Assembly (NCBI GenBank): GCA_047495785.1
Contig: JBLDXI010000064.1
Location: forward strand, 682,001 to 746,000
From: Lepidodermella squamata
Taxonomy: Eukaryota; Animalia; Gastrotricha
DNA: 64,000 bases
Reading direction: 5' to 3'
Made by a program: the position numbers and the translations under genes. Below, in pieces: positions 5,197 to 63,739 of the stretch. Under the pieces are notes generated by a model that worked only from the letters and a program-made list of their open reading frames with translations, did no database searches and was not told the DNA's origin. Each line of letters starts with the position of its first letter. Position 1 is the first letter of the stretch.

Positions 5197-5204
5197 ATCG
5201 CAAT

Positions 5205-31655: not shown

Positions 31656-32628
31656 ATGCTAATGAGGTGGCCACGAAAATTCAAAAGAAATGATGCGATG
31701 AAATTAGATTAACCTATTCAAATTTGTAATAATGTGTTTAAATATTTTTTCATATTCCTGGCTCTTTTCTGAGTGTCACAAGTGGTCGGAGGACGTTCAA
31801 AAGGTTCTCATAATTAAATAATTAAATAATTAATTCTCATAAGACAAATTCACCCCCATAATTGAATTTTCCACGGGGCAATTTTGGCGCAATCACTTGG
31901 CCATACATGTGCATCGCCTCGGTGTACGGTTTTTTTCCCTGTTTTCACCGGAGGAAAAAATGTTATCTGTACTCAAAGCCTTTCGATTTGTTTCAGATAA
32001 TTTGATTCATTATCTGCGAAAACACGTTCGGGGTTACTGTAAGTAGTGCCGTCGACAACTGCGCCAAGCTCTTTATTCCGCAAAACGTCGTTTTAAATGT
32101 GTATACCACAGTGCTATGCAGATAAGCAGCAATAGGGGATATTGGATTTAAAACATTAAGCATTAAGTGGATGACATGAGACTAAATAACAAAGCACCAT
32201 CCTGTCAGCAAACCAACGTGACGAAATGCGGCAGCTCGCAATCCTGGACAAACTCGATAAATCGCTGTTTTTATAATATTTGGCAAAACTAGACCGTGCA
32301 GGAATGAGGACGAAAGCATTACTCAAGATCAAGATGAATCATCTTACAGCTACAGTTGTCAACTTCAATTTTCTCTTTCGTTTACCTCTAATCGAGCAAG
32401 CCGAAATTTGATGCCCAAACAGTAAATATTTCATTTTTTCCGAAATATAGGACTCGTGTTCGCATGCTTTGTTCGCATGCTTTGTGATTGCTCGAGGCGG
32501 ATATCTGTGCTGTTATTCGAGCACGCATGGGCGGCGGCGGAAGTAACCTGTCGAACGAACTGACAGTTGAAAGCCTCCGATCTGCTGCTGGGATTCAGCA
32601 CTAGACATTATTTTCCGAAAAACATTAG

Positions 32629-33141
32629 ATGAACGACAGCATTCTTTATCGGGCAGTGGCAGCTCAATCGAAGCTAGCAGCAGCAGCAGCAGTTTTGCTG
32701 CCTGGCGGGGCTTGGATTGCGGCTGATATCGAAGACCGCGGCTTCAATGGCTCGCGGCCGTACTTCATCGGCTATTTCCACGACCTGAGCAGGCCCTCGA
32801 TCGAAGGTCGACTGCCGTATACACTGACCATTGTCATAACAGCTGTCTTAGCGATCGCAGCCACCATCGCTAACTTGGTTGCCTACTACAAACGCGGCGT
32901 CAACAGCAGTTTCATCATGTTGTGCTGCTTGCTCGCTGCTAGCAATATCATTTACGCCCTGAATAGTTGCGTAGGCATGCTGATCCCTTTGCGAACTGGC
33001 TACTGGGAAGCCGGCCCGGTCGCTTGTTCGCTCATGTACTGGATTACGAGTTCGGTCGGGGCTTTTGGCAATTTCGTCTACTTTCTCATCAGCTACGAAC
33101 GCCGTCTCTGCGTCACCTCGGCTAGCATGTATCGATCCAGT
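32629..33141 (+). pseudogene. 7TM receptor copy C2: exon 1 truncated at the Helitron-like junction; exons 2-3 not found downstream
   Basis: Homology to 60929-61435 ends at MYRSS (33141), three codons before the conserved splice donor, and is followed by A7 and unrelated sequence. Confidence 0.8.
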
Positions 33142-33498
33142 AAAAAAACCATGCTAGGACATGAATGTGGTTCATTTTGGCAGCTTTGCGCTGAGCATAA
33201 AAGGTTTCACAAAGGTTCCACTCAACTACCCCTTGGAACTCCCCTCCTAGCCATCTTGGAGGGGAACGTTTTTCGCCCCTCCCCAATGATATTATATTCT
33301 CTTTACAATGACAGCAACCGGAATCGATGTATTGGTGAATCTTTGCACATGCACCTGCCCTCACCTTGATTACCCTCAATATAATGTCATTGGGCAAAAA
33401 CAGTGATTTGCATTTTATTATATCGAAAAAAGCTGAAAACGGTGAGACAGGCTTAAAATGTCATTTGAACCATGAAAACCCGAAATCGGCGAGACTTG

Positions 33499-36400
33499 TT
33501 ATTCGAATCGCACCTATATTATAGCAATTAAGAACATGAAGATCACAAGATGATGAACAAAAAACATACATCTCGGACATGAGCCAGTGGTGTTTCGTTG
33601 CCACGCCCGTTCGCCAGTTGCGTTACTTTCGCTTCGTTCAGCCGTCCAAAGGTGACAATGGCCAATCTCCGAAGGAAAGCTTGTCTCGCGCTTGTCTCGT
33701 CCACCTGATCGATGACAACTGCACGAACTTGCCATGGCAGAAGATCAGGTCTCAGAGCACGGTGGATGTCCCGCTCAAGTCGCATGCGAGCCTCATCCGA
33801 GGTAAAGCCATAGACTATGGCAAGCAATAGCCACTTGTCACCTCGGGTGAAGTTGGCGCCGTTACCATTATTGTGCTCCCTGAGACGCTCCTCGGCCGAA
33901 CGTTCAGTTTGCCCAATATAGGAAACATACGGGCGCGTTTCCGAAATCAGGTGGTAAACGACGCCCCAGTCAACGATTGGCACGACCGAATTTGTGACGT
34001 AGAAGACCGGGTCGGTGATGCTAACCACAGGCTGCCGGACGGTGAGGATGTCGAGTTGAGCCAATCGAGACATGATGGCGCGATCGTAGGGGTTGTCTTT
34101 TGTCAATATCGAATCGATCGCATTAGCCGTAGCTTGCTGGCTCGATGTGACAAAACCGACACGGTCCAAATTACGACACCGAGACACCATCACCAGCAGT
34201 TGCGCCTTTTCCCACATGCGCTGTGACCTGACGACATCGGACACCTGGATAACTACGCCCTCTTCGACAGTAGTGCCCATAATTCGGTGGACCGTCGTGC
34301 AAAGCTGAAAAAGAATGTGATTTTGAACATGTATATGAAGAGGCGTGAAAAATGTACGTAGTAGCGGAAGGGAAACTGAACTCGGCGGGCGCGTTTAGCA
34401 TCAAGGCCAACGATGATTGGCATCCCAGCATGTCGCGGGACTTGTATGAGAGGCCAAGTAGGATCCACAACAGCCGCAGCTCGCTGGCCCGGCGGAACAA
34501 GCCGAACAGTGACACGAGCCTGCCTATCCTTGATGTTGTCCGGGATAGCGACGACAATGGCAAGCTGACCTTGCGAGAACGTCTGCATGGGTTCGTTTGA
34601 TATGTTGTTGTAGGTCATGCAGAGCAGCTCGCCAACAAACAACGACAGCTTTCGAGGTTCAAGACAAATCTTATCGAGCTTCCTAATGAAATTCTGATTC
34701 GTCGTAGCCATGAAAGGCTGTGAACCCGATTGGAACTCGTCTATCGACTCACAGTCAACAACAGCAACCTGCCGGCGTTTTCTCGCAATGAACTCTTCGA
34801 TAACTTCTTTTTCAGCCGCCCGCGTGGTCACTATCCGAATCAAATTGTCAGGCGCTTCGTCCCAGCTGTTGTAAAAGCGAGCTCTTGCCAAGATCGTTTG
34901 GGACACCTCGTTACGCTGGATGTCATTTAGACTGGGCTGGCGTAAAAGGTCGAGGATGCCTTGAAGTTGAGGATCCTGCGCGGCTCTCACATAGTGCGAT
35001 AGCATCACAACGTCGAACGAAAACATCAGGCTGCTGGATACCCAAAACGGCCGACCCTGAGAAAAATAGAATAAAAAACATTACAAGTTGAAAAAATAAG
35101 CATACTTTGATTGGCTGCAGTTGCGCAAAGTCACCTAAACAGTTAGAATAGAAAACAAGTGTCAGAGAAATTAAAAAAAATAGCCGAAATGAACCTGTTG
35201 CAATGACAAGCTTGCCGCCGAATTTGAGGTCATTTCCCATTGTATATCGAAGTACAGCGTCGAGAAGGGCAAACATCTCCGCTGATACCAAACCGATTTC
35301 TTCAATGAAGAATACGTCTGTCCGGTAGATGAGCTGGGCTTTGACCGGGTCCCTGCCGAGCGCCATAATGCAGTCCTGAGACTCGAGAATAGCGTGCGAG
35401 TAAGTTGATGTGTTGACTCGCATTGGGAACACCAGGTGCAGGTGACGTCCGCCCAGTGAACGCGCTCGCTCCGAAGTCAGCGCCGTGAGACAAACGTTGT
35501 GACCTCTAGCCATTGCATAGAGAACAACTGTTTGAAGGAGATAGGTTTTTCCAGCACCCGGAGGACCGACGAAAACGGAATGATTAAACTTTGCTCGGTG
35601 TTGTTGCAAAAAATCGATTTTGCGTAGAGCGTGAGACAAAGCTTCACGTTGTTGGTCCAGCGAGGCATCAGTTTGACCTGGAAAAAGAGAATTTATCAAC
35701 AATGCAACATAGAATGTTTTAAATATAGAACCTGGCGATCGCTGAAGAACCGGTTGCCATTGAACAGGATTAGCGACACTGGCTTCGACGATATCAGCCA
35801 GCGGAGGGAGATCCAGTTTACCAGTAAGCTGTCCGTGTGTCACCTCGGCCAGGACTTCGCGGTAGAGCCTCTCAGCACTTTCGATCTGTTGAGATGCTCT
35901 GGCCTTCAAAATCACCGAAGAAATGGAGGGATAATCGGAATCCAGGCTTCCGGAAACGAAAAAGAAATCATGCAATATCGCACGAATTTTCTCGATGTAC
36001 ATTCCCAGCTTTTTCGCCGACACAGGCATCCAGGCCAGCTGTTCAAGGATAAGCCGGCGAAAAATGTTTTTCACTTCAGCCTCCAGGTTGGGAAACGTAT
36101 CGTTCGCTTCGTCATAGGTAACAAGGCCGACGTTCGCAAAATTTCGCCGCATGTCGCGAAATGCGATCGCCTGCAGTTCATTCTCCATCGAGCCAAGCGT
36201 CATAATACAATGGTAAAGAAACTTGAAGCGATTGTTCGGTGTGACGTTTGACGGAACGGTGACGGCGGCGACAGAATTAGTCGGCTTTACGTAGCGAGTC
36301 GTCATTTCAACATCACCTCTAGCTAACGCCATGAAAATGGCAAGCAGCGGTGCAACTGCTGGGTGATCTTGATCCTGTTTTAGCAGAAACTCCAAGCCGA

Positions 36401-39400
36401 GTTTGATGCTGCATTTGCGAACTTTATAGTGCCGACCGAGTGCGTCTATAAATGGAGATTTGGTTGGGTCTTCCAACAGCTCAGCTTTCTTGTCTGCTGG
36501 GACGAAAACAAAAACGCGATGAAAGATGTCGACGTTGTAGAAAATCAGCAATTCCGCTGGTCTGATGTTGAATCTTTCTGTTGCACCCGGTACAAGGTTG
36601 GATTCTCTGTACTCGCGAGCCAGCTGACACTGTTCAGGCGTGAATAACCGCCATGATTGAGCAAACTGGTATCGTGTCCTATTAGGATCGAATACAGCTC
36701 CGACGACACCTGTTGAAAAATGGCGAAAAGTCCATTAATAATTGTTTCATAATTGTAGCTAAAAATGAGTTGAAAATGTTTTGGAATAAATGGCGTGAAA
36801 AATTTTAAACGCTGGACCAAGCCATGGAGTTCAAATAAACTAATCTGTTACGTTTCGCCAAGTGAAGAAAGTTTTCTTCGAATGGTAAATGATCGTATTT
36901 ACTCCATTGTTAAATAACGGTGATTAGCTTGTTTTTACTTAAAAGTTTCATCGCGATTTTAAGAGAACTAAAACAATTAAATGCTGTTAACGTGGGTAAT
37001 TTGTGACTCATTCCCACCGTGATCAATTTTCTGTCTTACCGGATAGGATGCCTAGCCTTTATTCAGTGCCTGGGCGAATTTAATCGCGATGGAAAAAAAT
37101 GTGCAAATTTTTCGCGAAGAGTTTTCGTAATTGTTTCCGACCGAATTTGTTTGCTTTCCTGGCTGCTAACGACTTTGAACTCTAGGCTTCTCCGCGTTGG
37201 AAATTTGTCGAAACGCCATTTTTGGTGTTTTTTCATTATTTTTCAAGGTATTACTTGACAAATTTCCCCACACAAATTGCAGTATAATTATTAATTGATA
37301 GCTAAAAAATCGCCCGGGTGTCGCCCATTCTCTTTGCGCATCAAGAAATAATAACCAACGTCGAATCATCAACGGTAAAAATACGAAAAATCATCAAGGA
37401 AGCCTAGTTTCTACTATAAATTTGTTTTGAATTATTATTACTTTTATTATTTACCTGCCTTATACGTAGTAAAAATCACAGATAATATCATAACTTACAA
37501 TTTGTTCAAATTAATCGTGAAATAAGAGCAAATTTGGAGAACGCATTTTTAGCCAATTAATCCTCGAAATTTAATTTGGCTCCGCAATTTGGTTCCACTG
37601 AAATAATTTTACGGCAACTTTTCGTAGGAAAACAGCCAACATTCAATAAACCAGAAGTAAAAAAATTGAAAACTACTGGGCAAATTTCTCACGTGGAAGT
37701 GATGAAGCAAGCGATTTTTTCAAAAAAGTTAAATTTGAATTTGAAGGCGTCGCTAATTTTTAAAAAAAATTCTCAGCAATTAATTATGCCGGGGCGCGAT
37801 TAATAAGCTCAGGAATCCGATCCGGTTTCACGGAAAGTTTCAATGCCTCTCGAAATAAGTTACAAAAAGAAATGAAATATAACAAGGATTTTAGCTTGCT
37901 TTTGCATTTCGTTTTCGTTTTCATTTTCGTTTCTTGAGACTTTTGTGACTCTGTGAGAAGCATTGACATTTTCCGTTAAACCGGATAGAATTCCTGAGCT
38001 TTATCCGTGACTTGGATTTATTGTGGATTTATATATTGTGAAAATTAACCTTGAAAATTAGAGAAGCCATTAAATTATAAATGTCCTGGAAAATCGCTTG
38101 CTTCATCAATGAGTACTCGCGGCTGTTAACGTGAGAAATTTCGAGGATCTATATTTGACCAAAAATGCGTTTTCTAAATTTGCTCTTAATTAACGCAAAA
38201 CTACTGTAATTATAAAAAATTGAAATAAATGGTAGTTAAGGTCTCCGTGATTTTCAGTATGAGGCATGGCCACGGCTTTAAGGACTAAGTACAGTAATAA
38301 AAGAATAAAATAATATGAATAATAATTATAGGTACTACCGGGTGTTCCATTAGTAACGCAAGCAAAGAAAATACACGGAAAAGGGATCAGAAACGGTAAA
38401 ATACGGGGCCTCCTTTTCGCGGAACCAAATTTTAGAAATTTCTAGTAGCCTGAAATCGCTTTTTGGATAGCACTTGGAAGCCAAGATTGGCCACAATAAT
38501 TGTAAACAATTCAGTAATGAATTAGGCGCAAAATTATCTATAATGCGAAGTGTTCAGTTAAAAAATAATGCTTAGCCCAATTTTCATAGAAATATTCAAA
38601 AAATGAATTTTTGCATATTTCGACTTTGGTTCTGCAAAGAAAACAATTTGGTTCCGCTACGGCATATTTGGTTCCGCAATAGCAAATTAGGTTCCGCTCA
38701 CCGTAGATTTGATTCCGCCAAAAGATATTCCGATTTAAATACGAGTCAATTCAAGAAATACAAAGATTTAAATAAATCCCAATAAGTTCCGAAGTTTGAC
38801 TGGGGCATGAATTTTATGGGCATTTTTCTCAGGCAAGAACAACATGATCAGATGAAACTGGAAATAGAAAGCGAACCTGGTTGTAACGTGGAGCGCTGGT
38901 TCTTCGATTTGTATGCCAAACGCAGCTCTGGTGGCTGAGTGTTGGTGTGAATGTACTCCACGTTCGTATAGGTATACGGATAGCCAGATATAAACCAATG
39001 TTGCTCCGTTGCAGCAATCTCCATAACGTTAGTTTGCTTCACCCGCCGAATGTTTTCCTCGAATTTGCGCACACTAGTGATCTTGGTATTCGGCAAAGGG
39101 CCATCAGCGACTGTTGCCTCGACTTGACCAGGAACAGCAGTGCCTTTGAAATGGGGATTGTAACGAACTTCCTTTCCACTCACGTACTTCACGAGATAGC
39201 TGACCAGGAACCGCTCATCACATGCCTGAACATTTGTGGAACTCCTCATTAAGACGGCGAGCAATGGAATGGTGGGCAAGAACTTCTTTCCTGCAATGAG
39301 ATGTCTAATTGGGTAATGATGAACCCCGGCCCTGAGCTTCTCGTGGCACAATTTCCATTCAAATTCGCCATCTTTTCCCGTCGGAACACGTTCGGCTAGT

Positions 39401-42400
39401 CCCACGGATTCCAGAGTTTCATACGTCGCGTCGTCATAGATATTTTTCTTCTCTTCATAAAAATACTCCTCGCTTCGTGGATGAGCTCGTACCCGGCACA
39501 TCATCACCCCATCTTCGCCACGGGGCTTCATACAGCGCTCACCGGCAGCTTCGCAATCGTGGCAAGTAAGAATCTTCAGCGAGGCTTGCATGTCTTCGAA
39601 GTCATCATCGTCCTCGACAAGATCATCTGCCAACAGCATTTCCTTGGTAGAACGGAACTTTTCGGAGAAGAAAAGATCTGGATCCAGGCAAATGAGCTCA
39701 GCGACGTGTGGATCACCTGGTTTTTGAGAGACTGAGACTCCGCCGTGGACGTGGCATTTATTGCCCAACGAACCCTGACTCTGAAATTCAATCCTCGAAA
39801 AATGAGTGTTGACTTTTCCGAGAATTTCTGATGGACTTTTCTCGAGGAAACGTACAACGTGATATATGGTGCGCTGCCAGACCATGTTAATGATGAAAAA
39901 GTTGTTCTCGTAAATCTGCCTATACAAGTCATTGTCAAGGATGAGTGAATCGACTTGCCGCTGCTTCAACGAATAATCGACCTTGAAATTAGTAGCGTCA
40001 TCTGCTGGTATTCGCATTTGAGAGGCTATCTTAAGGCGATTGATGAAAGGCCGGAGACCAGGTGAACCACGTTCATTGGCTGCAAACACAAAAAATTAGC
40101 AGTGACTCAATTGTTAATTTTATTAAGGCATACCGGTAAAGGTATAAAACAATGACCATGGGGCGAGTTTCATAGACGCAGCCAATTCCTTGATTTTACG
40201 AGACGAGTCGAAGTCGTCATATTCGAGCTTGGTTTGCACCGAATCGACTCCGAAACCTCCTTCGTCACTGATAAATTCAAAGCCTCGCCGGAAAAGCAAT
40301 GTGGAGCTGTGATGATTCAGACGTTCGTTGGCAGAAATGTCGAAAGCGAGACTCACTGCGTCCCAAGAATGTGACGTAGCAAGATCGCCATCGGCCAGCC
40401 GAACCCTGTTGTGTGCATCGAGGCTTGCGATTCCTACGAACTGGTTTGAATCTGGAGCGCAGTAAAGGTGATGAGGCAATGCGCCGAGTATAGAACCCTT
40501 GAAGTTTTTATAATAGATAGAAGGAAGGAGATTTGCGTCGGGGTACATCAACGACGCAGCAGGGGCACCGCCAGTTCGAACCATCTGCTGCATCGCGTAG
40601 TGCGACTTCTTAGAGGAGAACTGAGCTAGCTTTCGTTCAAGGATTCGAAAATAAAAGGTCAGCATATATTTGCTAGGAATTCCCGTTCGAGAGGTGCAGA
40701 ATTTGACCATATCAGAGACGGATATGGCTTGATCTGTCGGCTGATCAAGATACACGTCATCTGGCAGGGCTGATCCTTCAACCCAAACAGGATCCTCATG
40801 CTCAGGCTCATCTATTTCAGGCTCACCTCGAAGCCGCCTTTGTTGCTCCAAGGTCATTTCGAGTTCATCTTGCGGTTCAGCTTGCAGTAAAGCCTGGGAG
40901 CAGTTTCGCATAGCATTAGGCACGGAGTTACCGCCATTAGTACACAATTCTTCCGCCTCAGGGATATTCGTAAGTGGCTCCAAGAAAGTAGTTGGTGGCT
41001 CTATTGGTGTCGAACGATCAGTTGGCAGGTTTTTCAGGCAACGCTTGCATATACCAACGGTACATAACCGACCCAGGTGCATTCCTTCAGGGCAACGGAG
41101 CAAAGCAGGCCGTCCACATTGCCGAGGCGGGCCACGTCGGCCAGCTGGAACGTAGGCGCAACATTTCGTAGCCAAGTCCAACGGCACCTCAGTCAAGCCG
41201 TGCCCGTCGTGATGTTGAACGTGAAGTGAACAAACTGCAACTCGCTGACCACCAAGCGCGGATAAAACTGCGTGATGTTGTGCTTTTTCATCGCCGGGTC
41301 GAGTGTAAATAGCGTAAACAACGGCGCCGGAAATGGCTGCGAGGTTGTTAATCTCTTGAACTCGTCCTTTCTGCGTCGTAGACCACCATCCCGAATAGTC
41401 ACCACCCCAGCGCATTAACGTCAAAAGATTATTCGGTAACTTATCTTTTGCTGGAGTTTCAACTAGCAGAAAGACTAATGAATGACTACCGAGCTTGAGC
41501 GGGAATTTATCAGGAATAATGGAATCAGATCCATAAGGTCGACAAAACAGGATGTCCGTCTTGGGTTGAAAATCTTGAAATAGGCGAACTTTTTCGAAGC
41601 GGCTGTTTGGTCGTATCATCGGCAAGGCGAGAACGCTGTTGTCCGCTGAAAATAAATGTGAAGATGCTACAAATAGAACGTAAGTGAAAGAGTTAGCTCC
41701 TAGGTGATTCCTATCAGGGTGATATACAGTGAAACATTGGTTTAGCGTCATGTACTGATTGGACTACTGAAACCTCGGAAACTATATTTGCCTTAAAATT
41801 CAAGATAAAATCGGGAACCAATCGATATTATCTGACTTCTGAATTTTTCAAGTAAACCGAGGGGATAGATTTTTTGCGATAAGTGACTTGTTTTGTCACA
41901 TTTGCTATTTTGCGCAGTTTCTGTTTTAGCGCCTTGCCAAAATTAATTTAACCGAAAATAGATGAAAAGTGGGGTCTGGTGATATTTTGATGTCGATCAG
42001 TACAACAAATAGGTTGATATTTATCAGGGTTGCAGAAAATTGGCTTCAAAGTTGACCAGTGATAATTTCTAATTTGGAAAAATGCGCGCTCAAAATATTT
42101 CAGTTTTCATCACAAGTATTAAAAATCCCTCGCGCAATAAATTCTAATTTCATGTTTTTTGCGCTTTCGACATCTCTAAGGTAATCTGAGGTAAGGAATT
42201 TGTCATACTGTCATATTTGTCATAAATTTCTCTAGTTTAATAAAAATCGTAAAAATCTGTTGAAAGCATTTACAGGCACGAAATAATTATTGACAATAGA
42301 ATCACATTTGATTACAACGGAATAAAATATCCGGCTAATTTATGAACTGATATAATTATTTTACCTCGTCTGCTCTGACTTCTTATCGCTCGCTGATTAG

Positions 42401-45400
42401 GTTCATCGGCCACTTGGAGATGTAATCGAAGATTAACAACACTGGCGCCAGACGTCTGAAGTTCATCACCACCAACAGCGGGACATAACTTGTTGAGTAA
42501 TTCAATCGCCCGGTCAGCAATATCTGGAATAAGGTCACCTGCAGCATTACGCAGTGAAGCGTCCCATAGGTGACGACCAGCGATACCGCAGTCAATTGAT
42601 AGCGGCAAATTTTGGAAAATCTTCGCAGTCATCTGGAACAGCTTAGAAACTGGAAGTTGACCCAAGGAAAATTGAGCAGTTGAAACGTAATTAGACAACG
42701 CGTTTCTATTGACAGCGCGGCAGTTGAGTAACACGTTCAAGACATGCCAGGTTAGAAGACACATCCTCTTATTTTTCGTTTTCGCACCGACAACGCGGAA
42801 AGCAAAAGGTATCATGCCGTATTCATCAGCTTTATGAACAGGGTTCACAATGAGTTCCTTTACAGAAATTTTGTTTTCGGCAAGAGGAGCTTGTTCTTGA
42901 ACCGGGGCAGTAGTCGGACCAGTCGCCTCTTTTCGCAAAATAGCCCACGAGTGATAAACATCCGAACGTTCCATGAAAGTTGAGCCGCCAATGGCTTCCT
43001 GAATTTCCGTCGTAAGGCGACGGTATTTTCCCCGAAAAGCTCGTTCCAGGTGGGAGACTTCTTCAATGCCAAATTTAGCAATCATACAACGCTTGATGTC
43101 AGGCCGTTCTGCCGCTGCCAACATCTGTGGTTCAATATCTTCGACATCAGCAACAACGTTTTCATTAGTGGGCGCGATACTGAAGGTGCTACAACCGTTG
43201 TAACCCCCAACAACAGCATAAACGGGAGTCGAAGAGGTACATTTCCCAATACGAGTTTTTCGAACCAAATTAGGCATGATTTGAACAGGGGCGACAACTT
43301 CAGGCGTCTGACGACATGTCGCGCTGTAAGTTGGGTTTTTCGGGATGTGTAGGAAACGCGACCGAAGCTCATTGCGGGAATGCCTGTCGCAAACCAGGAC
43401 ACAAAGGCCCTTCACCTTGTCGATTGCCATTCCACAATTTACCGACCAGCCGAAGTAATCACTGGTAACATTCGGATAGTCAGAACGGGCTGAAAGGAAC
43501 CAGCGATGATCGGAGTCTCCGATTCGCAGTCGAGTTAGGTGGTTGACGAGATGATTAGCAGGAATTTTCTGACAAAATTCCGGCCACGTCCAGCAACCCA
43601 GAGAGCATTTTACCGGCGGGCAGCACGTACTGTCCAATTCTCGCTTCAACGAACCTACAAACCAAAGAGGAAATAATAAAATCAAATTGTATACTTGAAA
43701 AAGCAATACCTGGGCTTCTGTAGGCTCGAGTCTCGAAACCGTCCAGATAGTCCGAGTGGTCGATAAAATAGGGCTCACCAGAGGTCATGAGATTATTTCC
43801 AGTGGTTTGGATTTCAACTGCCCACATATCACGCAGCCGTTGCGGAATTAAATTCGTGAGCTTGGAGCCATCTTCTCTGAATTTCGGGTCGAAGAATAGG
43901 CTATGAAGAATAGCCGCCCAAGCGTCTTCGAATTGGAGCTTTTTGTTGCAGCTTTTGGCCGATTTAGTCGACTGAACCTCGAGATAGCGTTCGCAAACCT
44001 CACAAAGTAGGGCGTTTTTAACAGTAGACCTCCGCTTTATAGCACCGTAATTTCCACCGCGCACTTCTTCAACACGGACAAATGGGAGAGGGTCTTTGGC
44101 CGTTGCAGTTCGTTTGCAAGAATCACACTGCGGCGCTGTTATAGAGAGAACGAGATTAAGAATTGAAATCTCCAAATGAGAATTTTGCCAACAGCACTTA
44201 TTAACCCAAACTATTTCAATTTGAAAATAGGATAATTTCGTTTGAAAATAGGAAAAACGAGATAAATGCAAATATTATTAGAGCCTAAAAATTCGATAAT
44301 CTGCACAGCTATAGAAATTTGGAATTAATTCGAGTATGAAGTATAGGTATAAGAAATATTGTGAGAAAATCAAATTTCATAATACTGGTTGAATGAAATA
44401 TCGCTCTCGATTTAGGGTGGAGATAGGAATTTTAGCCGCGCCAACTACAGTAGTTTTGCGTTAAGCCGGACTCGATCCGCGCCAGAAGATTTAGTCCGGC
44501 TTAATGAAAGTCCGCTTTATTGTAAGCCGGACTGGTCCGGTTTATAAAAAAAACAGTGCATTTCTTTACAAATTATTCAAGAATATAAGCGCTATTAAGT
44601 AATGCGCTATTTAGGTGTGTAAAAAGTTCTATTATCGCGATGGAATCAAGGTTTTGCCATATATCGACAAATTATTTTTCAATACTGCGATCATTTTTGC
44701 TATCAAAGCCACTCAAAAACAGCGTAAAGAGGGTGTTTCTGCGCTCTAGATGAAAATGATCCTGTAAGCCGGACTTTTTTGAGTTAAATTCACTAAAAAT
44801 CAGTCCGTTATAACGCAAGTCCGCCTTATGACAGTCCGGCTTATTGCAACCATTTGCATGTAAAACGCTAGTCCGCGGCACGAGCCAAGCAAAATGGTCC
44901 GGCTAAGCGCAAGTCCGGCTTATGATCGTCCGGCTTAACGCAAAACTACTGTATTTATTGAAATTTAGAGAAGTTCGACCTCAGGGCTGGAAAAAGTGTC
45001 CTATCACAAGATGTGCTTTCGGGCCAAAATTAGCGGATATTTCCGAGTCTCGATATGCCTGATGAATTACAGGGAACTTCCTAACAGAGAATTCGCTTGA
45101 TACCGAAGTTTAAAAGGTGGCTTGTACTTTTTTCCATTTCCAGAAAAATAAATTGCCGCAAAGGTAATGGTGTTGAGATCTTGGGAAGAATCTTCCACCG
45201 CGCTTTATTTCGCTCGTGCCTGATAAATCGGTGAATTAATATAGTAATTTTTGGACCATATTTTCTTCTTCAGAAAATGTTTCTTTTTCCCCGAAAAATA
45301 TTTTGTTAATCAAAAACCACGACTAGCATCTGTTTCACGGAGTATATTTATAGTGTATTTGTGTTGGCGTAGTAGCCATTAAATTAAAATTTGGCATATA

Positions 45401-48400
45401 CCGTACTGCCCGAAATTTTTGCCCTCTATTTTTCAAAAAAAGTCGCAGCCCCGTCTTATATTTGAGACCGCCATCTATTTGAGGTCTGACCTTTATTATT
45501 TCGAACCCTTTTTAACTCATCAGATGCCGCGAGTTAATGTTTTTTCGTCAGCTAATTCCACGTTTTGTCAGCTAATTCCAGTTTTCGTCAGAAATACCAT
45601 TTTCTGTCAGAAATGACACTTTTTAACAGCTAATTTAACATTTAATTACTAATTATGATTATAATTATATACTGTTCTCAATTTTCACGTGAATAGCGCA
45701 GCGCGGAAATTCTTTGATTTCTTAAATATTGCTGGTGCTATATTTTCGATCATAAATCCCTAGCTAAACCTGAGTGGAACCCATTTCGACCTTTTTTCGC
45801 GAGAAAAATTTCGCAAAAGTGCGCCCCCAGTTCCATAATCCACAAAGATTTCACCTCAGCTTCTGGCGCGTAGTCGCGAGTTTTCACCGTGAACTGTCCC
45901 TACTATTTTTTAGTGAATTTTTTTCAAGTTAATCCCAGGCGAGACAGTCACGTCTTCAATTGTAAACAGCATGTGACTTGATTTTCAAGGTATCCTATCC
46001 ATATTTTGTTGATATTTCTTTACCGTTCTGGTAACAGTAGTGTTATCGTAGTTTTTCTGTAGTTTTACCGTAGTGCCACGGAAAAACTACGGTAGCAATC
46101 GTTTATAGGTATTTACTACCAAAATGTGCTACTAAGACGTCGTGCGATTAAAAATCCGAAAGCATATTAGAGCCAATAATTTTGAAAAAAAAATGTCAAC
46201 ATTTTCCTACGTTATTTTCGTGAAAATGGGCAGGAAATAGAGTTACAGAGCACTAATAAATTAAAATTAAAATTAAATATTAAATTAGCTGTAAAAAAGT
46301 GTCATTTCTGACAGAAAATGGTATTTCTGACGAAAACTGGAATTAGCTGACAAAACATGGAATTAGCTGACGAAAAAATATTACACCCGATGCCGCTAAA
46401 CAACACTTCCGGTCCCTAAGAATTGGCCAGTTGATTATGAAGACGCTGTAGTAGAATTCGAATTCCTTTAAAATATAAATATTTTTAAATATTCTAAATA
46501 TTTTAAATATTTTGAAATTTAAAAAAATAATGATAAAAGCGTGACCGGAGGCCTGATCTTTATCATTTCGAATGACCCTTGAACCCCGTCTTATATTTAA
46601 GGCTGACTAAATTTTCGGGCAAAACGGCCAAACGGTAATTTCCTTTTCTGGCAGAAAAAATATCGGAATATATTTTAGCGGAACCAAATTCGAAATATGC
46701 CAAGAGTCAGTTTTGCATATTTCTACGAATTGAACATTCCGTCTTATAGAGAATATTGCGCTTAATTCACTGGTGAATTTTCGGGAATCATTAGTGCTAA
46801 TAGTGATTTCAGGCCACTAGAAAAGTCCACAAACTACAAATTTACGCTAGCAAGAGGACCGAAAAAATATGATTTCTGGAAAAAAATGTCTGCTAAATAT
46901 TCGGCTAAAATGAAAAAAATTCTAACAATAACATATTCTGGCAATAAAAGAATTCTTCCAATTTTCCACGAACTCAAAAAATCATGAACTAGACACGAAA
47001 GAAAATAATAGCTGCGACCCCTCGAGTTTCGTCACGATGGCATAGGTGTCTGAGTTGGAAATATACTCATATTCATAAATCAAATTGTTGTGTAACTGCA
47101 AAATTGCGCGAAAGGTTTGTTCATTTTTTCAAATAACGGGTGAATATATACCTACCTCATTTAATTAGAAATTCGAACATATCTGTTCGGAGAATTGTTC
47201 TATTTATGTGATTCAAGAAGTGCTCCTTTTATCGGAACAAAATTGACAGTGAGCAGAACTTTTCTACAGGCCTGAAATCGCTTTTCAGATACTTTCTTGG
47301 TCTCAAAATTAACACGATAATTATTCTTAAAAAAAACACCAGTAAATTCAGCGTAACATTACTTGAACAATGGCGAATTTTTGCCAGAAAAGTATTTTTT
47401 TCAATAAAATATTTCAATCTTCAGAAATTAATTCAGAAATTCAATCTGCAGAAATAAAGAGATAAGAATATTAAATTTCATTTCGGATATTTAAGGGAAA
47501 AAAGCACTGCTGGCTTTTGGACACTCTCATTAGACTGGCTCGATCTAAAAAATTCGGCTAATGAGTGAATTAATAAGCAGATATTGAGAAGTGAGATTTT
47601 TAACCATTGCGATTTTGATTGATAAATAATCTAGCAGCTTTTAAACCCTAAAATATTTAACAGTCTAATTAATTTCAAAGCGAAGTATTTGTCGAGTCTA
47701 ATAAGAGGGTTGAGGTGCCATAATAGCTTAATTTGGGCTGTATCCGAGATGTTTAAAAAACGCTTAAAAAGCGGGATTTTTGTAGAGCGAGGAAAATTTC
47801 CCTCGATTTCATTCTTGAACCAAAAATATGGGATTTTATAAAACAAAATTAACGGGAATTCGAATTTTTACAACGGTAAAAAAGACTTACTCGACTCGCT
47901 GGCATTTTTAGTTGCTGTAGCTGACGGCGGAACAGGCTCGTGTGAAACTTCACGGCTTTTCCGAGCTCGCCTACGCTTCTTCGCCCTGGTGCTGATGGCC
48001 GGAGCAGACGGCTGAGACGGCGACATCGATGGACTAGTTGCAGACGGTGGAATGCTGTTCACCGCTTCATGACTTGAAGCTGGTTGGACACCGGCCGCGG
48101 ATCTTGGAGCCGGAATTTCCATCGGGCTGCTAATTGAGCATTGATCTGGTCTTTCAGGTTCGGAACGTAACAGTGGTAACAGAGCAACATAGTGCCCACT
48201 GCCGTCGTACGCAATGTGAATAACAGCCGGGCCATTTCCGTAGGAGAATATGTTTCGGCTTCGAGCATCGAACAACTTCACAGTAACGTTAAGGCCATCA
48301 GCGACCGATAACAAGGAAATGTTATCGCCCCAGTCCCCGCCTTGTCTCGCAGGCATGCCGATACGCCGTGTCAACTCAGCCATGCTCGTACTAGGCAATG

Positions 48401-50288
48401 GCTGGCCGCAATTCCTCGCATTTCGCATCGTTAAAGGGTCGTAGGCCCACAGGTGGTCATAGGAGCCGGTAGAAAGGCGACTTTGTGCTAACCTCCGCAG
48501 CTGCATGAAATCATACACCATTCCGGCACGCCTGGCCGCGTCAGAAACTGCGTAAAATTGGCAATCGCCTTGGGCAGGGTTGTCGACAATTTCGAGTCTA
48601 TTAATTCGAGCTGCTTCCCTCAACCATTCGCCATCGGCAAGTGGTGGCAACGCAGCAGGAAGAATCAAGGTGACGTCAGGTAAAACTGCCGAGCAATCTA
48701 TGAAATAGGGCGTTATTCGACTGTTTTATAAAAGGATTGATTGAAAAATGCCGCTAATGCTCAGCAATAATTTGGTAAAATACCATAATTTATGGCATGT
48801 TTGCTCCTTTCAATCACGTCTTTTGGAGCATAAGTTCCTTAATTAAGAAAATTCCGTAAAGTTAATGAAGGCAGAGACTTAAATAAACCAACAATTTATT
48901 CCACAAAACTATTAGGTAAAAACTAGTATACTAGTATATTTAACATGTTTAAAAATTCTTTAATCTTATTCTTTCACATTTCCTAAATTTCCTCCTATTC
49001 AATATTTTCAATATTTTCTGATGCTCTGAAACCGATGGAACGTGACGCCTTAGATCTAAAAATTAATTGCCTGATGATTTTTAGTACTACTACAGCGTGT
49101 CCCAGAAGTGGCACAACTATTTTGTGAGAAATTCCAACAAAATTAGAATTAAACCTACCGATAGAATATTCCATTTTTATCCGCGATTCAACCGAAGCAA
49201 AATAAAAATTATTAGAAAATACTGGAAAAACCTGATGATACTGGTTTGGTAACATTTCTCCGGATTTTCCAATCCCATTAACAGTTTAGTCGAATCATCG
49301 CGATTTTTTTATTTTTTATAAAATTATCCTGATCATGGGATGTGACTTACTCTCCGCGTATTTTGTTTTTATTTCGTTAGCATGGGAAACACTACTAATA
49401 TCCTGTTTTCATTAATTTTTGGTTTTAGATATTTTCGGCCCTTTAATATCAATGGATTGATGGACTAATGGAACACGTAGTAATGCCATTAATGATAGCT
49501 TGAAACTCACTTGTAGCACTATCAGTCTCATTGTAGGCGGAAGCAGAATAGGGAAATGCGTCGCCTGCCAATTTTCTGGCAAAATCAGGTCCAGCGATGC
49601 CGATTCGACCAGACACAACATCAGCAAAAGACCGACGTTGATTTTGAGACCCTGGCTGAAAAGCTGGCGATTGTTGCGGTATAGTAGACGAAACGCCGCC
49701 GCTGCTGCCTTGAATGCCTGAATGCCAAATGTTATCAATTTCAAGTAAAATAATTCAGAAATTCAGAAAAAAGATGTGCCTTGTTCTGCTATTGCCACGA
49801 CGTTGACTAACCACTTTCCTTACTCGAGCAGCATGACCATAATAATTAATTAATATAAAATTATATTAAAATAGTGGTATTTTATATATTATAAAATTAT
49901 ATAAAAAACGATAGTATTTGGCCTAATTTCATGTACTAAACACTAGAAATCGAATACCTAAGTATATCTGAAATTTCTTTTACGAATATTATTGATTACA
50001 AATTAAAATACAACTATGATAACTTGAAATGATGTTAAAATAATTGTTTTAGAAAATTGCAATATCTTCCTAATTCTTACCAGAGGAAGAAGGTTCAGGA
50101 TTTTTTGCGGGCACTTGGTCACTCACAGATTGCGCGGCCGCAACAACTGGGCAACATCGTGCAGCATGGTGATTGTTACAATGGGAACAGTGAGTAGTTG
50201 CCTTGGCGCCAGTTTTTCCGCATTTCGAGCATGTCGGTGCCGTACCTTTCTTTGTTGTCAAACTATCGTCAAACGTGGTTCTTGGCAT
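33499..50288 (-). CDS. Rep-helicase polyprotein, about 2,860 aa, 13 exons: 50288-50081, 49717-49511, 48697-47891, 44135-43710, 43654-42365, 41645-40134, 40079-38877, 36709-35732, 35677-35195, 35134-35106, 35056-34358, 34304-33570, 33513-33499 (ZnF - OTU - Cys-rich - Rep - PIF1 - GIY-YIG)
   Basis: All junctions are GT-AG, in phase and stop-free. Splicing rebuilds Rep motif 1 LFYTFT|ANE, helicase IATG|DFAQLQPIK and FRYY|LCTTVHRIMG. Also present: RIEFQSQGSLGNKCHVHG (HUH), SYLVKYVS (Y2), GPPGAGKT, QLLVMVSR, GVVYHLIS..SYIGQT..ERLREHN (GIY-YIG) and GDCQFYAV...GHY (OTU). AATAAA at about 33414-33419 on the minus strand. Confidence 0.85.
37440..38320. mobile_element. Degenerate foldback/MITE in RepHel intron 7
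   Basis: Nested inverted blocks, e.g. 37520-37570 vs 38135-38190, 37700-37720 vs 38090-38108 and 37804-37850 vs 37955-38003; boundaries approximate. Confidence 0.55.
44448..44951. mobile_element. Tc1/mariner (pogo-like) MITE in RepHel intron 3
   Basis: Perfect TIR CAGTAGTTTTGCGTTAAGCCGGA at both ends; TA TSD at 44446-44447 and 44952-44953. Confidence 0.85.
45531..46388. mobile_element. MITE with about 120-bp TIRs and an 8-bp TSD (Mutator/Merlin-like), nested in an older element in RepHel intron 3
   Basis: TSD GATGCCGC at 45523-45530 and 46389-46396; TIRs contain repeated GTCAGCTAATTCCA units. Confidence 0.75.
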
Positions 50289-52141: not shown

Positions 52142-54358
52142 TCAGGCGTCATCCACAGCATTGTTTACGGCGTTTTCAACTTCATCGTTCGCCGGGGCTA
52201 CGTCGAGGCCCTCGTTGTTGTTCCCGGCTAGAACGTCGCCGTTACCGTAGTCCAACGCGGCTTCGTTGATGTTGTTGTCATCGAAGATGTCAACGTTGTA
52301 GTTGTCGTTTGCATCCTGGTAGTTGTTGTCGTCCAGGATGTCAACGTGACCGTTGTCGAGGCCGTTAATGCCATGGTCATGGGCTTCAGGGTCATTTTGA
52401 GCATCGCCATTGTGGCCATTGGCTTGATTGGCGAATCTAGGAGCAGGTAGTTCGAACATGGGCAGCGGTGCCCCCAGCGGTACTAGTTTCGCGACGTGGG
52501 TCTTGTTGATGGTCGCGACATCCTCGCCCCCAGCTTTGGAAGACTTGACCCACAGGAGCAAGCGAAATCCTCCGACATGCGCCTCCATTGAGCGGATGAT
52601 ATGCTCGGCCACATCGTTCAAGTCGACATCCGTAATTTCGCCATGCATTATGGCTGATGGCACAAGCTGGCTCATCAGCTCGAATGAGTAGTACACCTCC
52701 ACGAGCAACTCGCCCAATTCATGACACGAAATCAATATCCCGGGAAGCCATCGCACCGTCACAAACCTTGGGCCAAGGCAATAGCAGCCGACACCATACC
52801 GGCCGTCGCAAGACTTTCGGCAGGCCTTCGAGAACACTACGTCGTTCACAAACAGCTGGGCAGCCGTAAATCGGTATGAAAAGAACCGTTCGCGCACCGG
52901 AACTCCGCCGGCTGGCAGCGGAACCGTGACTTGCATCACCGGGCGCTGGTTGCGAGTCGGGGCGATGCAGTCCGTGCTCAACACCTCCATCTCTCGCCAA
53001 TTTTCCTGAAGCATGGCCGGGCGGCTGAGGGCGACTACTGTACCGGGACTCAGTTCGTCGATGAAATGCATGGATAGACGGCCGAACTCGGAGTCGTTCA
53101 CTTTCACAACGAAAACGCTGTCATCCATGTCGACTCGCCTAAATAACAACGAAAATAAATTCAGATCAGAAAAAGCAGCGTCATATTTTCCTTCACAGCT
53201 TAACATAACGAGGATTTATTTCTTAATTTTCAACAAAACATTTTTCAATTTTCAAGTATTTTTTAAATAATTTTTAATTTTATTTGTTAATTTCGATAAT
53301 AAAAAACTATTCTAAAATGATAGTTAATAATTGTCTTTCCCTGCGTAATTTTTAAAAATTTTTAATAATTTCAAAAATTAATAATTAAATGCAAATAGGT
53401 AACGTGGCAGAAGTAGGTGGTATTCAAGAATATTTCATGCGTGAAACAAAATTCTCAGAAATTTTGAAAATTTTGAAAATATAAATAAAAATTACAATCG
53501 ACAACAAATTTTTTTTAATCCCAATAGCCAATCCCGGGAAAAATTGGAAAATGACAAGTAAATTAAAAAAAATAATCAGCAGCCACAGCAGCCAGCTGAA
53601 AGCTAAACAATTTCGTACAATTTGCTGGAACCACTGACTCGCGCTAAGCCCCATTTCAAAACTTACAGGTAATGAGTGATATCATGATGAATCCTATACG
53701 CCTCCTTCTATCGTATTGTTAAAAAACGAAGAAACCGAACTCACGTTAGGAAAATTAGGTACAAGTACGGGGAGTCATTTCGGCCTCCTCGTTGGCTCAT
53801 GCTGTTGCTGTTGCTGATTGTCGGACGCTTCGTGGTCTTCTCTGCTTTAAACCGCTTTATCGAAATAATAATGCCGAAAGTTGTCGTCCCCATTCGAGGG
53901 GCACGTGTTACCGCCTCCAACCGGATCAAACGAGCGCGCTCGATGGCGCGTAACGCTGTATCACGATCGTTGGCACGTAAATACCGCGAGATACAAGTCA
54001 AACTGTGGAAAATTTTATGTTGTATAGCAAGCAATTCTCCTTAATTTTGAAAGTGATATGTTAAATTATTTTAAATTCGAAAACCGTATCCGGGGGCGTA
54101 TAATTGTTACGAATGCTCAAACTGTAAAAAATTTCTCTAAATACCCGCTAATTGCCCACAGTGAGCCGAACACCAGCTTGCCAAAACTCAAGAGAATATT
54201 CAAATATTCAAAATGTCTCAAATATTCAAAATTTTCGATAAATTCAGGGCAAGACCTAAATATGATTTTAAATTGTGAATTTAGAAAAATTTCTGATATT
54301 TTCGCCATTTTGTTCTCTTCAATATAAATAGTAAAACTTACTCATCGGTTCTTGACAT
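52142..54358 (-). CDS. Helitron companion gene, 3 exons (54358-54342, 54002-53769, 53138-52142), 415 aa; putative OB-fold/Zn-ribbon ssDNA-binding protein with an acidic Asn/Asp tail
   Basis: GT-AG phase-2 junctions give an open 1248-nt frame starting MSRTDDLTCISRY. It has beta-rich segments (TTFGIIISIK, VFVVKV, LSPGTVVALSRP), a Cys cluster ACRKSCDGRYGVGCYC and a D/N-rich C-terminus. The functional call is inference. Confidence 0.65.
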
Positions 54359-63259: not shown

Positions 63260-63739
63260 ATGACGAATGCTTCAGCGTCCTTGATTCCGTTCACAAGCTC
63301 GTGGATTCTGGCTGATTTGCCTGACCGTGGCTTCAATGGCTCGAGGCCGTACTTCATCGGCTGGTTCCACGACTTGAGCGCTCAATCGATCGAAGACCGG
63401 CTCCCGTACACGCTAACTGTTTTAATAATGGCGATTCTCGGAAGTCTAGCCAGCATCGCGAACGTCGTAATCTACCACCGCCGCAATGTCAAACGAGACT
63501 TCCTGATGCTGTGCTCTCTGGTTGCGATTAGGAATGTTTTATGGTCCGCAAACTGGTCCTACGCTGTGCTGGTACCTTTGAAGACGGGCTTCTGGGAGGC
63601 AGGCTCAGCAGCTTGCTCTACTGTTTATTGGAACACGGCTACACTGGGCGGCTTCGGCTGTTTCGCGAACATGCTCATCAGCTACGAGAGGCGACTGTGC
63701 GCATGCTCAACATCGCTATACCGCTCCAGTGCATCGAAA
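63260..63739 (+). CDS. 7TM receptor copy B4, exon 1 (gene continues beyond the window)
   Basis: SSWILADLPDRGFNGSRPYFIGWFHDL...ISYERR, with the conserved AAA|GTAAGT donor at 63740. Confidence 0.8.

What the first reader, a model, noticed from the sequence alone, without database searches (positions are those of the whole stretch)
33499..50288. Scattered ORFs splice into one intact, about 2,860-aa ZnF-OTU-Rep-PIF1-GIY-YIG rolling-circle transposase
Seen: about nine separate minus-strand ORFs and a few small exons join through 12 GT-AG introns with no stop or frameshift. Three catalytic motifs are only completed across splice junctions, including one on a 29-nt micro-exon. Established: HUH/Y2 Rep fused to PIF1 defines Helitrons, and some animal Helitrons/Helentrons add an OTU protease and an AP endonuclease. 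Inference: the size, intron-rich structure, divergent motifs and GIY-YIG nuclease suggest a distinct and possibly undescribed Helitron-like lineage that is recently active or under selection.
Basis: partly seen in the sequence, partly recalled or inferred. Interest (0 to 1): 0.92.

Follow-up and report, generated by a model that had tools for sequence, protein, structure and literature searches.

The report
Split Helitron-like transposase with GIY-YIG nuclease
A 17-kb, intron-split but fully intact gene in an animal genome encodes a 2,867-residue rolling-circle ("Helitron-like") transposase that ends in a GIY-YIG nuclease. It belongs to a widespread group of such proteins that I found as a recurrent lineage in no paper of the held library.

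Summary
Minus-strand ORFs between 50288 and 33543 join through 11 GT-AG introns, plus one optional terminal intron, into one stop-free 2,867-aa protein. Its order is Zn-knuckle, OTU, about 1,000 aa of conserved N-terminal modules, HUH/Y2 Rep, PIF1-like helicase, GIY-YIG. Exons are 50% GC and introns 22-35%.

Six junctions, including both sides of the 29-nt micro-exon, match intronless homologues residue for residue. A search of 1.84 billion proteins with the Rep exon found 232 relatives. The 52 long ones share the same domain order, and the GIY-YIG is present wherever the C-terminus is complete. Named members come from an ostracod, a tunicate and a hagfish; the rest are metagenomic.

Pfam and the solved Helraiser structure place Rep and helicase in the Helitron world, but only distantly. 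The nuclease is Slx1/YhbQ-like, not the AP endonuclease of Helentrons.

In a related family, four paralogous copies show purifying selection, strongest on the GIY-YIG (dN/dS 0.07).

The only run holding the stretch is DNA, kept as contigs. It shows this copy to be low-copy with diverged paralogues, so "recently active" is not supported. No RNA data exist and the termini were not found.

The scan noted three other such genes elsewhere in this genome. The held literature mentions a GIY-YIG only once, in one moss Helentron-group family. Verdict: a new variant of a known kind.

The parts
50081..50288 (-). Exon 1: start codon and CxxC...HCxHC zinc knuckle
   Evidence: ATG at 50288. The zinc knuckle aligns to the N-terminus of the Cyprideis torosa relative P0001, inside a 27%-identity alignment with E 5e-26.
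49511..49717 (-). Exon 2: low-complexity linker; the acceptor is uncertain
   Evidence: Best-scoring path. Alternative in-frame acceptors are listed (AG ending at 49652 or 49565). Not conserved in homologues.
47891..48697 (-). Exon 3: OTU-like cysteine protease / deubiquitinase with a basic Ser/Pro-rich tail
   Evidence: Pfam OTU only at E 0.13, but it aligns to the Pfam-verified OTU of P0011 at E 1e-9, with the GDCxF Cys box and the HYxxLL His box in register.
43710..44135 (-). Exon 4: module N1, a CxxC...CxxC zinc ribbon plus a conserved segment
   Evidence: Conserved in 30 of 52 long relatives. The junctions to exons 3 and 5 fit the homologues.
42365..43654 (-). Exon 5: module N2, Cys/His-rich beta domain plus helical domains, fold unassigned
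   Evidence: Conserved in 40 of 52 relatives. AlphaFold model pLDDT 73, pTM 0.64. No match in the PDB or the ESM Atlas: Foldseek E>1, VIA Z<5, TM<0.3.
40134..41645 (-). Exon 6: module N3. It holds a USP-palm-like beta subdomain, a Cys/His cluster, a helical N-terminal part of the Rep domain, and the first half of Rep motif I.
   Evidence: Conserved in 50 of 52 relatives. Model residues 5-133 match USP palm subdomains at Z 8.2-7.6, and 24 of the top 26 hits are USP, Pan2 or PLpro. Nine of ten Atlas rows are UCH. No conserved catalytic His.
38877..40079 (-). Exon 7: Rep endonuclease with motif I completed, HUH (HVH), an internal H/C zinc motif and two tyrosines (YLVKY)
   Evidence: Alignment A1 has invariant or near-invariant H115, H117, Y300 and Y304. 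Profile hit to Helraiser 7lcc. Helitron_like_N in 30 of 30 members, best E 4.5e-10, but only 0.033 for the window itself.
35732..36709 (-). Exon 8a: linker and N-terminal helicase-associated region
   Evidence: Collinear with relatives. Followed by the 54-nt intron 35731-35678, which matches an 18-aa gap in all homologues.
35195..35677 (-). Exon 8b: PIF1-like helicase Walker A (GPPGAGKT) to Walker B
   Evidence: Pfam PIF1 at 4.6e-12. The best solved relative is Helraiser 7lcc at 3.7e-6, then cellular PIF1s.
35106..35134 (-). 29-nt micro-exon that carries helicase motif III (G)DFAQLQPIK
   Evidence: Sequence read directly. Exact register with 11 homologues.
34358..35056 (-). Exon 10: helicase 2A/2B region
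   Evidence: Collinear with relatives.
33543..34304 (-). Exon 11: helicase motifs V-VI, then the GIY-YIG nuclease (GVVY...YIGQT...RLREHNNG...E) and the stop codon at 33545-33543
   Evidence: Pfam GIY-YIG at 9.2e-10. The nearest solved relatives are UPF0213/YhbQ-like BH0048 (E 0.0017) and SLX1. Catalytic positions are conserved across 41 family members.
33499..33513 (-).
   Evidence: Second-best path. GT-AG with a plausible 56-nt AT-rich intron. The C-terminus is not conserved, so this is untestable here.
52142..53206 (-).
   Evidence: Language-model neighbours are CTC1, POT1, MEIOB/REPA_OB_2 and Ssb-like OB (score 0.92, 178 shared features). No Pfam or PDB sequence hit. A lead only.

Best explanation
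This is the transposase gene of a Helitron-like (rolling-circle) element. It belongs to a deep, widely distributed clade in which RepHel is permanently fused to a C-terminal Slx1/YhbQ-type GIY-YIG nuclease and preceded by about 1,000 residues of clade-specific Zn-rich modules, often with an OTU domain in front.

Shown here: the gene is intact, split by 11 or 12 short or TE-swollen introns, and every catalytic motif is present. These are HUH plus two tyrosines, the Walker A/B and SF1B helicase motifs, the GIY-YIG Y/Y/R/H/N/E positions, and the OTU Cys and His boxes.

Inferred mechanism, by analogy with Helraiser and Helentrons. The Rep tyrosines nick and covalently carry one strand of the element. 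The PIF1-like helicase unwinds it 5' to 3' into a circular intermediate. The GIY-YIG nuclease supplies the target-site or second-strand nick that the AP endonuclease is assumed to supply in Helentrons. The OTU domain, and possibly the degenerate USP-like module, act on ubiquitin to protect the transposition machinery.

In this genome the copy is low-copy and sits among diverged paralogues. It is therefore an old, still-coding lineage rather than a recent burst.
For: Gene model. Domains.

Clade: the Rep exon finds 232 proteins at E<=1e-3, 29 of them at <=1e-30. The spliced product aligns end to end with single-ORF proteins of 2,200-2,800 aa, for example P0011 residues 245-2749 in one alignment. 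Domain order is conserved in 52 long clusters, and a GIY-YIG region was detected in 32 of them, the rest appearing to end before it. Even a 21%-identical outlier has PIF1 plus GIY-YIG.

Transposon behaviour in relatives: one 90% cluster holds intact and broken members on several long contigs. At least four distinct copies are about 97% identical, two of them on one contig. Their dN/dS is 0.26-0.40 overall and 0.07 on the GIY-YIG.

Other copies in this genome: three earlier notes and 80-90%-identical contig pieces over the GIY-YIG and helicase motifs.
Against: No element termini, hairpin or target-site signature could be defined. Mobility of this copy is therefore not shown.

The window's own Rep and OTU fall below Pfam thresholds.

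Depth over the gene body is single-locus-like. Eleven introns with nested repeats would also fit a long-resident, possibly domesticated gene.

There is no transcript evidence. No tree against reference Helitron, Helitron2 or Helentron sequences was possible.
Confidence: 0.78

Rival explanations
1. This is a domesticated host gene. A RepHel-GIY-YIG transposase was immobilised long ago, acquired host-type introns, and is kept for a cellular function such as DNA repair or replication, or defence against related elements.
For: Intact 8.6-kb CDS with 11 host-like short AT-rich introns ending in TTTCAG-type acceptors. Single-locus-like depth of about 90-98, with no near-identical extra copies. No termini found. 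Long introns carry nested repeats, which implies long residence.
Against: Several diverged copies with the same architecture are noted in the same genome. The clade is patchy across animals and protist-like metagenome contigs. The nearest relative, from an ostracod, is only 42% identical, which does not look like orthology. Close relatives elsewhere are multi-copy, with both broken and intact members.
Confidence: 0.14
2. There are two or more separate genes. The ZnF-OTU part (exons 1-3) would be an independent gene upstream of a RepHel-GIY-YIG gene that starts in exon 4, and the 3.7-kb 'intron 3' would be intergenic.
For: Intron 3 is long (3,755 nt) and holds a MITE-like inverted repeat. Junctions 1/2 and 2/3 lie in unconserved sequence. 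Only 5 of 52 long relatives show an OTU. There is no RNA.
Against: OTU and RepHel lie in one uninterrupted ORF in P0011, P0153, P0043, P0158, P0160 and P0161. The in-frame GT-AG join 47890/44136 lands 3 residues before the conserved CxxC that begins module N1 in the homologues. Exon 4 has no start codon of its own in a conserved position. The nearest relative, P0001, also has ZnF plus OTU at its N-terminus.
Confidence: 0.06
3. This is a decaying relic. The open frame would be a leftover of a recently dead copy with no function and no selection.
For: Low copy number and no sign of recent amplification.
Against: There are no stops or frameshifts over 8,604 nt across 12 exons, and all catalytic residues are kept. 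Meanwhile the introns have had time to accumulate nested repeats and to diverge to 22-35% GC.
Confidence: 0.02

Closest known systems
Helentron / HLE2 group of Helitron-like elements (Thomas and Pritham 2015; HELIANO, PMC11417382; Heringer and Kuhn, PMC8788227)
   Same: One giant protein with optional N-terminal deubiquitinase-type domains (OTU; UCH and VTD are also reported in HLE2), Zn-finger region, Y2 HUH Rep, PIF1-like helicase and a C-terminal endonuclease. A possible ssDNA-binding gene lies upstream, which is where HELIANO finds RPA in HLE2.
   Different: The C-terminal nuclease is a GIY-YIG (Slx1/YhbQ-like), not an AP (Exo_endo_phos) endonuclease. About 1,000 residues of conserved N-terminal modules have no Pfam family. 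Rep is so divergent that the window's copy misses the Helitron_like_N threshold. Termini are unknown, and phylogenetic membership of HLE2 was not tested.
Canonical Helitron (HLE1), e.g. Helraiser, PDB 7lcc
   Same: Rep motif I, HUH and the YxxKY tyrosine pair align to Helraiser residues 513-613 and 697-747. The helicase exon's best solved relative is the Helraiser helicase.
   Different: The similarity is very weak (profile E 0.083 for Rep). HLE1 has no C-terminal nuclease, and OTU is only occasional there. No 5'-TC / CTRR-3' ends were identified here.
HelenSM92 family of Sphagnum magellanicum (HELIANO, PMC11417382)
   Same: The only Helitron-like element with a GIY-YIG domain that I could find in the held literature. 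It is classed there as HLE2.
   Different: It is described as a one-off domain capture in one moss family. Here the GIY-YIG is a clade-wide, strongly constrained feature in animals and marine eukaryote contigs. No sequence was available to test whether HelenSM92 belongs to this clade.
Penelope-like retroelements with a GIY-YIG endonuclease
   Same: An analogy only: a mobile-element lineage that uses a C-terminal GIY-YIG nuclease where a sister lineage (non-LTR/LINE) uses an AP endonuclease.
   Different: These are retrotransposons with no Rep and no helicase. The GIY-YIG here is nearest to UPF0213/Slx1-type domains.
Replitrons (Craig; mentioned in PMC9977147)
   Same: Eukaryotic transposons with a Rep-class HUH endonuclease.
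   Different: Replitrons have a single catalytic tyrosine and no helicase. This protein has two tyrosines and a PIF1-like helicase.

Membership tests
Helitron-like elements (RepHel transposons, broad sense) | Rep domain with the HUH metal-binding motif | tested here: met
   HVH in exon 7. H115 and H117 are invariant or near-invariant in 30 relatives. They align to the HUH of Helraiser.
Helitron-like elements (RepHel transposons, broad sense) | Two catalytic tyrosines (Y2, YxxxY) | tested here: met
   YLVKY. Y300 and Y304 are near-invariant. They align to Helraiser residues 697-747.
Helitron-like elements (RepHel transposons, broad sense) | PIF1-family SF1B helicase fused C-terminal to Rep in the same protein | tested here: met
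   Pfam PIF1 at 4.6e-12. The best PDB hit is Helraiser, then PIF1s. The order Rep then Hel is seen in the spliced model and in all 52 long relatives.
Helitron-like elements (RepHel transposons, broad sense) | Pfam Helitron_like_N above the gathering threshold | tested here: inconclusive
   The window's Rep scores 14.8 bits against a cutoff of 28.9. All 30 aligned relatives match at E<=0.1, the best at 4.5e-10, and P0011 scores 31.8 bits.
Helitron-like elements (RepHel transposons, broad sense) | Characteristic termini (3' hairpin, specific end nucleotides) and no target-site duplication | tested here: inconclusive
   Hairpins and a high-copy block lie just 3' of the gene (33140-33300). No second copy was available to define the ends. 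The flanking paralogues diverge in an intron.
Helitron-like elements (RepHel transposons, broad sense) | Multiple copies or evidence of transposition | tested here: inconclusive
   This genome has three other notes and 80-90%-identical contig pieces, but no near-identical copies. A relative has at least 4 copies at about 97% identity plus broken members.
Helentron (HLE2 with endonuclease) | C-terminal AP (Exo_endo_phos) endonuclease | tested here: not met
   No Exo_endo_phos hit in any exon or in the relatives scanned. The C-terminal domain is a GIY-YIG.
Helentron (HLE2 with endonuclease) | Phylogenetic placement of Rep/Hel inside the HLE2 clade | not testable with these tools
   No reference Helitron2 or Helentron sequences could be fetched. 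The word-indexed searches returned only clade members.
Canonical Helitron (HLE1) | 5'-TC ... CTRR-3' ends with insertion between A and T | tested here: inconclusive
   The CTAG motifs near 33122-33157 lie partly in sequence shared with flanking-gene paralogues, so they are not a demonstrable terminus.
Replitron | Single-tyrosine Rep without a helicase | tested here: not met
   Two tyrosines and a helicase are present.
GIY-YIG nuclease superfamily | GIY ... YIG motifs followed by the conserved Arg, His/Asn and Glu | tested here: met
   Pfam at 9.2e-10. GVVY, YIGQT, RLREHNNG and E are kept and conserved in 41 family members.
OTU cysteine proteases | Cys box and His box in the OTU fold | tested here: inconclusive
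   Pfam gives only E 0.13. GDCQF and GHYVALL align to the Pfam-significant OTU of P0011 at E 1e-9. The fold was not modelled.
USP/UCH deubiquitinases | Complete thumb-fingers-palm fold with catalytic Cys and His | tested here: not met
   Only a palm-like subdomain of about 130 residues matches (Z about 8). There is no conserved His or Cys box in the family alignment. The preceding module N2 has no USP match.

The most novel reading that the evidence does not exclude
The gene represents an unnamed major lineage of Helitron-like elements, on a par with Helitron, Helitron2 and Helentron. It would be defined by an ancestral, strongly constrained C-terminal GIY-YIG nuclease and a clade-specific N-terminal module of about 1,000 residues that includes a degenerate USP-like domain. 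It would be spread across metazoans and marine eukaryotes and missed by current Helitron profiles. This would be a second, independent solution to the endonuclease problem of rolling-circle transposons, parallel to the LINE (AP endonuclease) versus Penelope (GIY-YIG) split among retroelements.
Probability: 0.45. Interest if true: 0.75.

Novelty: new variant of a known kind. Interest (0 to 1): 0.62.

Why it matters
Helitron-like elements are currently sorted into Helitron, Helitron2, Helentron and proto-Helentron, and the only recognised fused endonuclease is the AP type. This clade carries the GIY-YIG wherever the C-terminus is complete, and the GIY-YIG is its most constrained domain. That would add a new architectural variant and give a natural experiment on what the extra nuclease does in rolling-circle transposition.

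It also exposes about 1,000 conserved residues with no family assignment. And it shows that profile-based Helitron annotation can miss a whole lineage, because the window's Rep scores below the Pfam threshold.

For this genome, the practical point is that roughly nine 'scattered ORFs' are one gene and should be annotated or masked as a transposon-derived gene.

Tried and rejected
- **Word-indexed homologue searches.** The search with the Rep exon found nothing because of the length window. The search with the helicase region of P0011 returned only close clade members, so no reference Helitron or Helentron sequences could be obtained for a tree. The search with a flanking GPCR-like ORF, meant to identify the host, found nothing.
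- **Single-sequence PDB search with Rep.** It found nothing. Only the family profile reached Helraiser.
- **RNA evidence.** No RNA run holds the stretch. The one run is DNA contigs.
- **Termini in the window.** Self-comparison, a hairpin search and alignment of the flanking-gene paralogues gave no defensible end. I considered the CTAG near 33122 as a Helitron 3' end and rejected it, because that sequence is shared with the paralogues of the flanking gene.
- **Termini from relatives.** L002 and L003, L007 and L008, and L001, L004 and L005 turned out to be the same loci in different samples. L006-L010 share more than 20 kb, including repeat-rich flanks, so the ends remained unresolved.
- **Language-model search** for modules N2 and N3 gave no usable hit.
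- **Fold searches for N2** found no fold.
- **Gene model.** The first automatic model skipped the micro-exon and read through the 54-nt in-frame intron. I corrected it by hand from the homologue alignment.

Full report
**Observation**

The minus strand between 50288 and 33499 holds a chain of long stop-free segments in different frames. A splice-aware dynamic programme trained on the segments' own codon usage joined them from the ATG at 50288 to a stop at 33545-33543. After two hand corrections the model has 12 exons and 11 GT-AG introns. It encodes 2,867 residues without a stop.

It cannot be tested, because the C-terminal tail is not conserved.

Three independent lines say the introns are real.
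- Exons are 50% GC and introns 22-35%.
- Seven introns, counting the optional one, are 49-60 nt, AT-rich and T-rich towards the acceptor, several ending in TTTCAG like the introns of the neighbouring host genes.
- Six junctions fit intronless homologues to the residue. One of them is a 54-nt intron that is in frame and stop-free. It would never be detected from stops alone, yet it corresponds exactly to an 18-residue gap in all 11 aligned relatives.

The 29-nt exon 35134-35106 encodes (G)DFAQLQPIK, which is helicase motif III, in perfect register with the relatives. Rep motif I is completed across intron 6. The segment leading into helicase motif V is completed across intron 11.

The boundaries of exon 2 lie in an unconserved linker and remain uncertain.

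**Domains**

- **Helicase and nuclease.** Pfam finds PIF1 (4.6e-12) and GIY-YIG (9.2e-10) directly.
- **Rep.** The Rep exon reaches Helitron_like_N only at E 0.033. An alignment of the Rep region from 30 relatives shows invariant HUH histidines and the YxxxY pair, plus a conserved H/C zinc motif between them. Its profile hits the solved Helitron transposase Helraiser at motif I/HUH and at the tyrosines, and nothing else in the PDB. All 30 members hit Helitron_like_N. The helicase exon's best solved relative is also Helraiser, ahead of cellular PIF1s.
- **OTU.** Pfam gives only E 0.13. The window's OTU aligns at E 1e-9 to the Pfam-significant OTU of relative P0011, with the Cys and His boxes in register.
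- **GIY-YIG.** It is closest to UPF0213/YhbQ-like and SLX1 nucleases. It keeps the positions that are conserved in 41 family members.

**The family**

HMMER against 1.84 billion representative proteins with the Rep exon returned 232 proteins. Many are 2,200-3,600 residues long.

Named ones come from the ostracod Cyprideis torosa, the tunicate Styela clava and the hagfish Myxine glutinosa, all annotated as uncharacterised or as a helicase. The rest are from Tara Oceans and other metagenomes, several labelled 'predicted GIY-YIG superfamily endonuclease'.

The spliced product aligns collinearly with these single-ORF proteins. With P0011 (2,814 aa) the match is one alignment from residue 161 to 2802. 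The order [OTU]-N1-N2-N3-Rep-HelN-Hel-GIY-YIG recurs in 52 long clusters. An outlier only 21% identical in the helicase still ends in a GIY-YIG.

In a maximum-likelihood tree of the Rep-helicase core, the window's protein is sister to the ostracod protein (42% identity, support 100). Both sit in a group with the tunicate protein.

**Transposon behaviour**

In relatives, one 90%-identity cluster has 16 members. They include intact 2,700-aa proteins and fragments, on several long contigs. At least four distinct copies are about 97% identical, two of them 36 kb apart on one contig. Between these paralogues dN/dS is 0.26-0.40. It is lowest on the GIY-YIG (0.07), then helicase (0.15), Rep (0.23) and N1-N3 (0.26), and it is relaxed on OTU (0.64). 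So the nuclease is an integral, constrained part of the enzyme and not cargo.

In this genome, the scan has three other notes of RepHel-GIY-YIG genes on other pieces.

The only run that holds the stretch is DNA, kept as contigs. It covers 33304-37000 with two contigs at depth about 90-98 and 5 and 3 mismatches. Extra contigs at 80-90% identity lie only over the GIY-YIG and helicase motifs. That pattern fits a low-copy, diverged family, not a recent burst.

**N-terminal thousand residues**

Modules N1-N3 have no Pfam family.
- **N3.** The AlphaFold model (pLDDT 63) begins with a beta subdomain that matches the palm of USP deubiquitinases at Z about 8. Of the top 26 hits, 24 are USP, Pan2 or PLpro, and 9 of 10 Atlas rows are UCH. 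No catalytic His or Cys box is conserved, so it is at best a degenerate USP-like module. Its C-terminal helical half runs into Rep motif I and belongs to the Rep domain.
- **N2.** The model (pLDDT 73) matches nothing.

The literature reports OTU, UCH and VTD deubiquitinase domains recurrently in Helentron-type elements (PMC11417382, PMC9741609). This fits that picture.

**Comparison with what is known**

The held literature recognises Helitron, Helitron2, Helentron and proto-Helentron, with an AP endonuclease as the Helentron hallmark (PMC8788227).

A GIY-YIG in a Helitron-like element is mentioned once, as a capture in the Sphagnum HLE2 family HelenSM92. It is not among the 20 recurrent accessory domains listed there (PMC11417382).

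The architecture here parallels a Helentron with the nuclease exchanged. Membership of HLE2 could not be tested, because no reference sequences could be fetched. Repbase and Dfam were not available.

**Surroundings**

The gene lies inside a tandem family of 7tm_1-like receptor genes, with MULE and RT fragments nearby. The host is therefore an animal.

Homology to the clade is confined to the exons.

On the same strand, 1.9 kb upstream of the ATG, a 354-aa ORF has language-model neighbours that are OB-fold ssDNA binders. It has no sequence-level support.

The termini were not found.

The exons were joined only in scripts, at predicted splice sites of an unbroken transposase gene.

**Verdict**

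The Helitron-like reading is supported. The 'distinct lineage' reading is supported by database evidence, though not by a reference phylogeny. 'Recently active' is not supported.

Noticed in passing
window 52142-53206 (-): A 354-aa ORF lies on the same strand, 1.9 kb upstream of the RepHel start. It has an acidic N/D-rich tail and a CxxxC...CxC motif. Its language-model neighbours are OB-fold ssDNA binders (CTC1, POT1, MEIOB/RPA, Ssb-like), but it has no Pfam or PDB sequence hit. It may be an RPA-like accessory gene of the element.
   Followed up: partly
window 33543-50288 (-), introns: Nine of the 11 introns are phase 1, and several split a Gly codon at CAG|GT. Three donors are the unusual GTTC. 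Relatives in metagenome contigs are intronless, so this lineage seems to have gained all its introns.
   Followed up: partly
window 45535-45660 and 46259-46383: A 113-126-nt inverted repeat (94-96% complementary) about 600 nt apart sits inside the 3.7-kb intron 3. It looks like a MITE-like insertion that helped to swell the intron. A palindromic block also lies at 37805-38001 in intron 7.
   Followed up: no
window 33140-33300: A block just 3' of the gene has nested GGGGAGGGG/CCCCTCC hairpins. Its contig depth in the DNA run is 600-1,400 against about 98 for the gene, and contigs diverge at 33287. It is either a high-copy repeat or a shared element end.
   Followed up: partly
window 14116-14769 and 17858-18511; 12910-14070 (-): Two perfect 654-nt inverted repeats lie 3.1 kb apart, next to a reverse-transcriptase ORF (RVT_1, E 2.6e-23). 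This suggests a young retroelement with inverted terminal repeats, or an assembly-level inversion.
   Followed up: no
window 1-7000, 21500-28200, 32600-33400, 58500-64000: Tandem and dispersed paralogues of weakly 7tm_1-like receptor genes (65-98% identical blocks) surround the element. The copy at 32669-33140 loses homology to its paralogues at its exon end, right next to the element.
   Followed up: partly
window 10878-12266 (+): ORF with MULE transposase and ZSWIM1-3 RNaseH-like domains (E 7.7e-10 and 7.5e-13).
   Followed up: no
window 15458-15810: Short array of 30-nt repeats (TGTTTTCTACTCGTAACAA core) in two clusters.
   Followed up: no
L006-L010 (metagenome contigs ERZ26052449, ERZ24986310): Copies of a related 2,700-aa RepHel-GIY-YIG gene share about 97% identity over more than 20 kb. 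The shared stretch includes about 10 kb of repeat-rich upstream sequence and a 1.65-kb direct repeat about 20.5 kb apart. Some copies abut head to tail, which suggests elements of about 20 kb or tandem arrays.
   Followed up: partly
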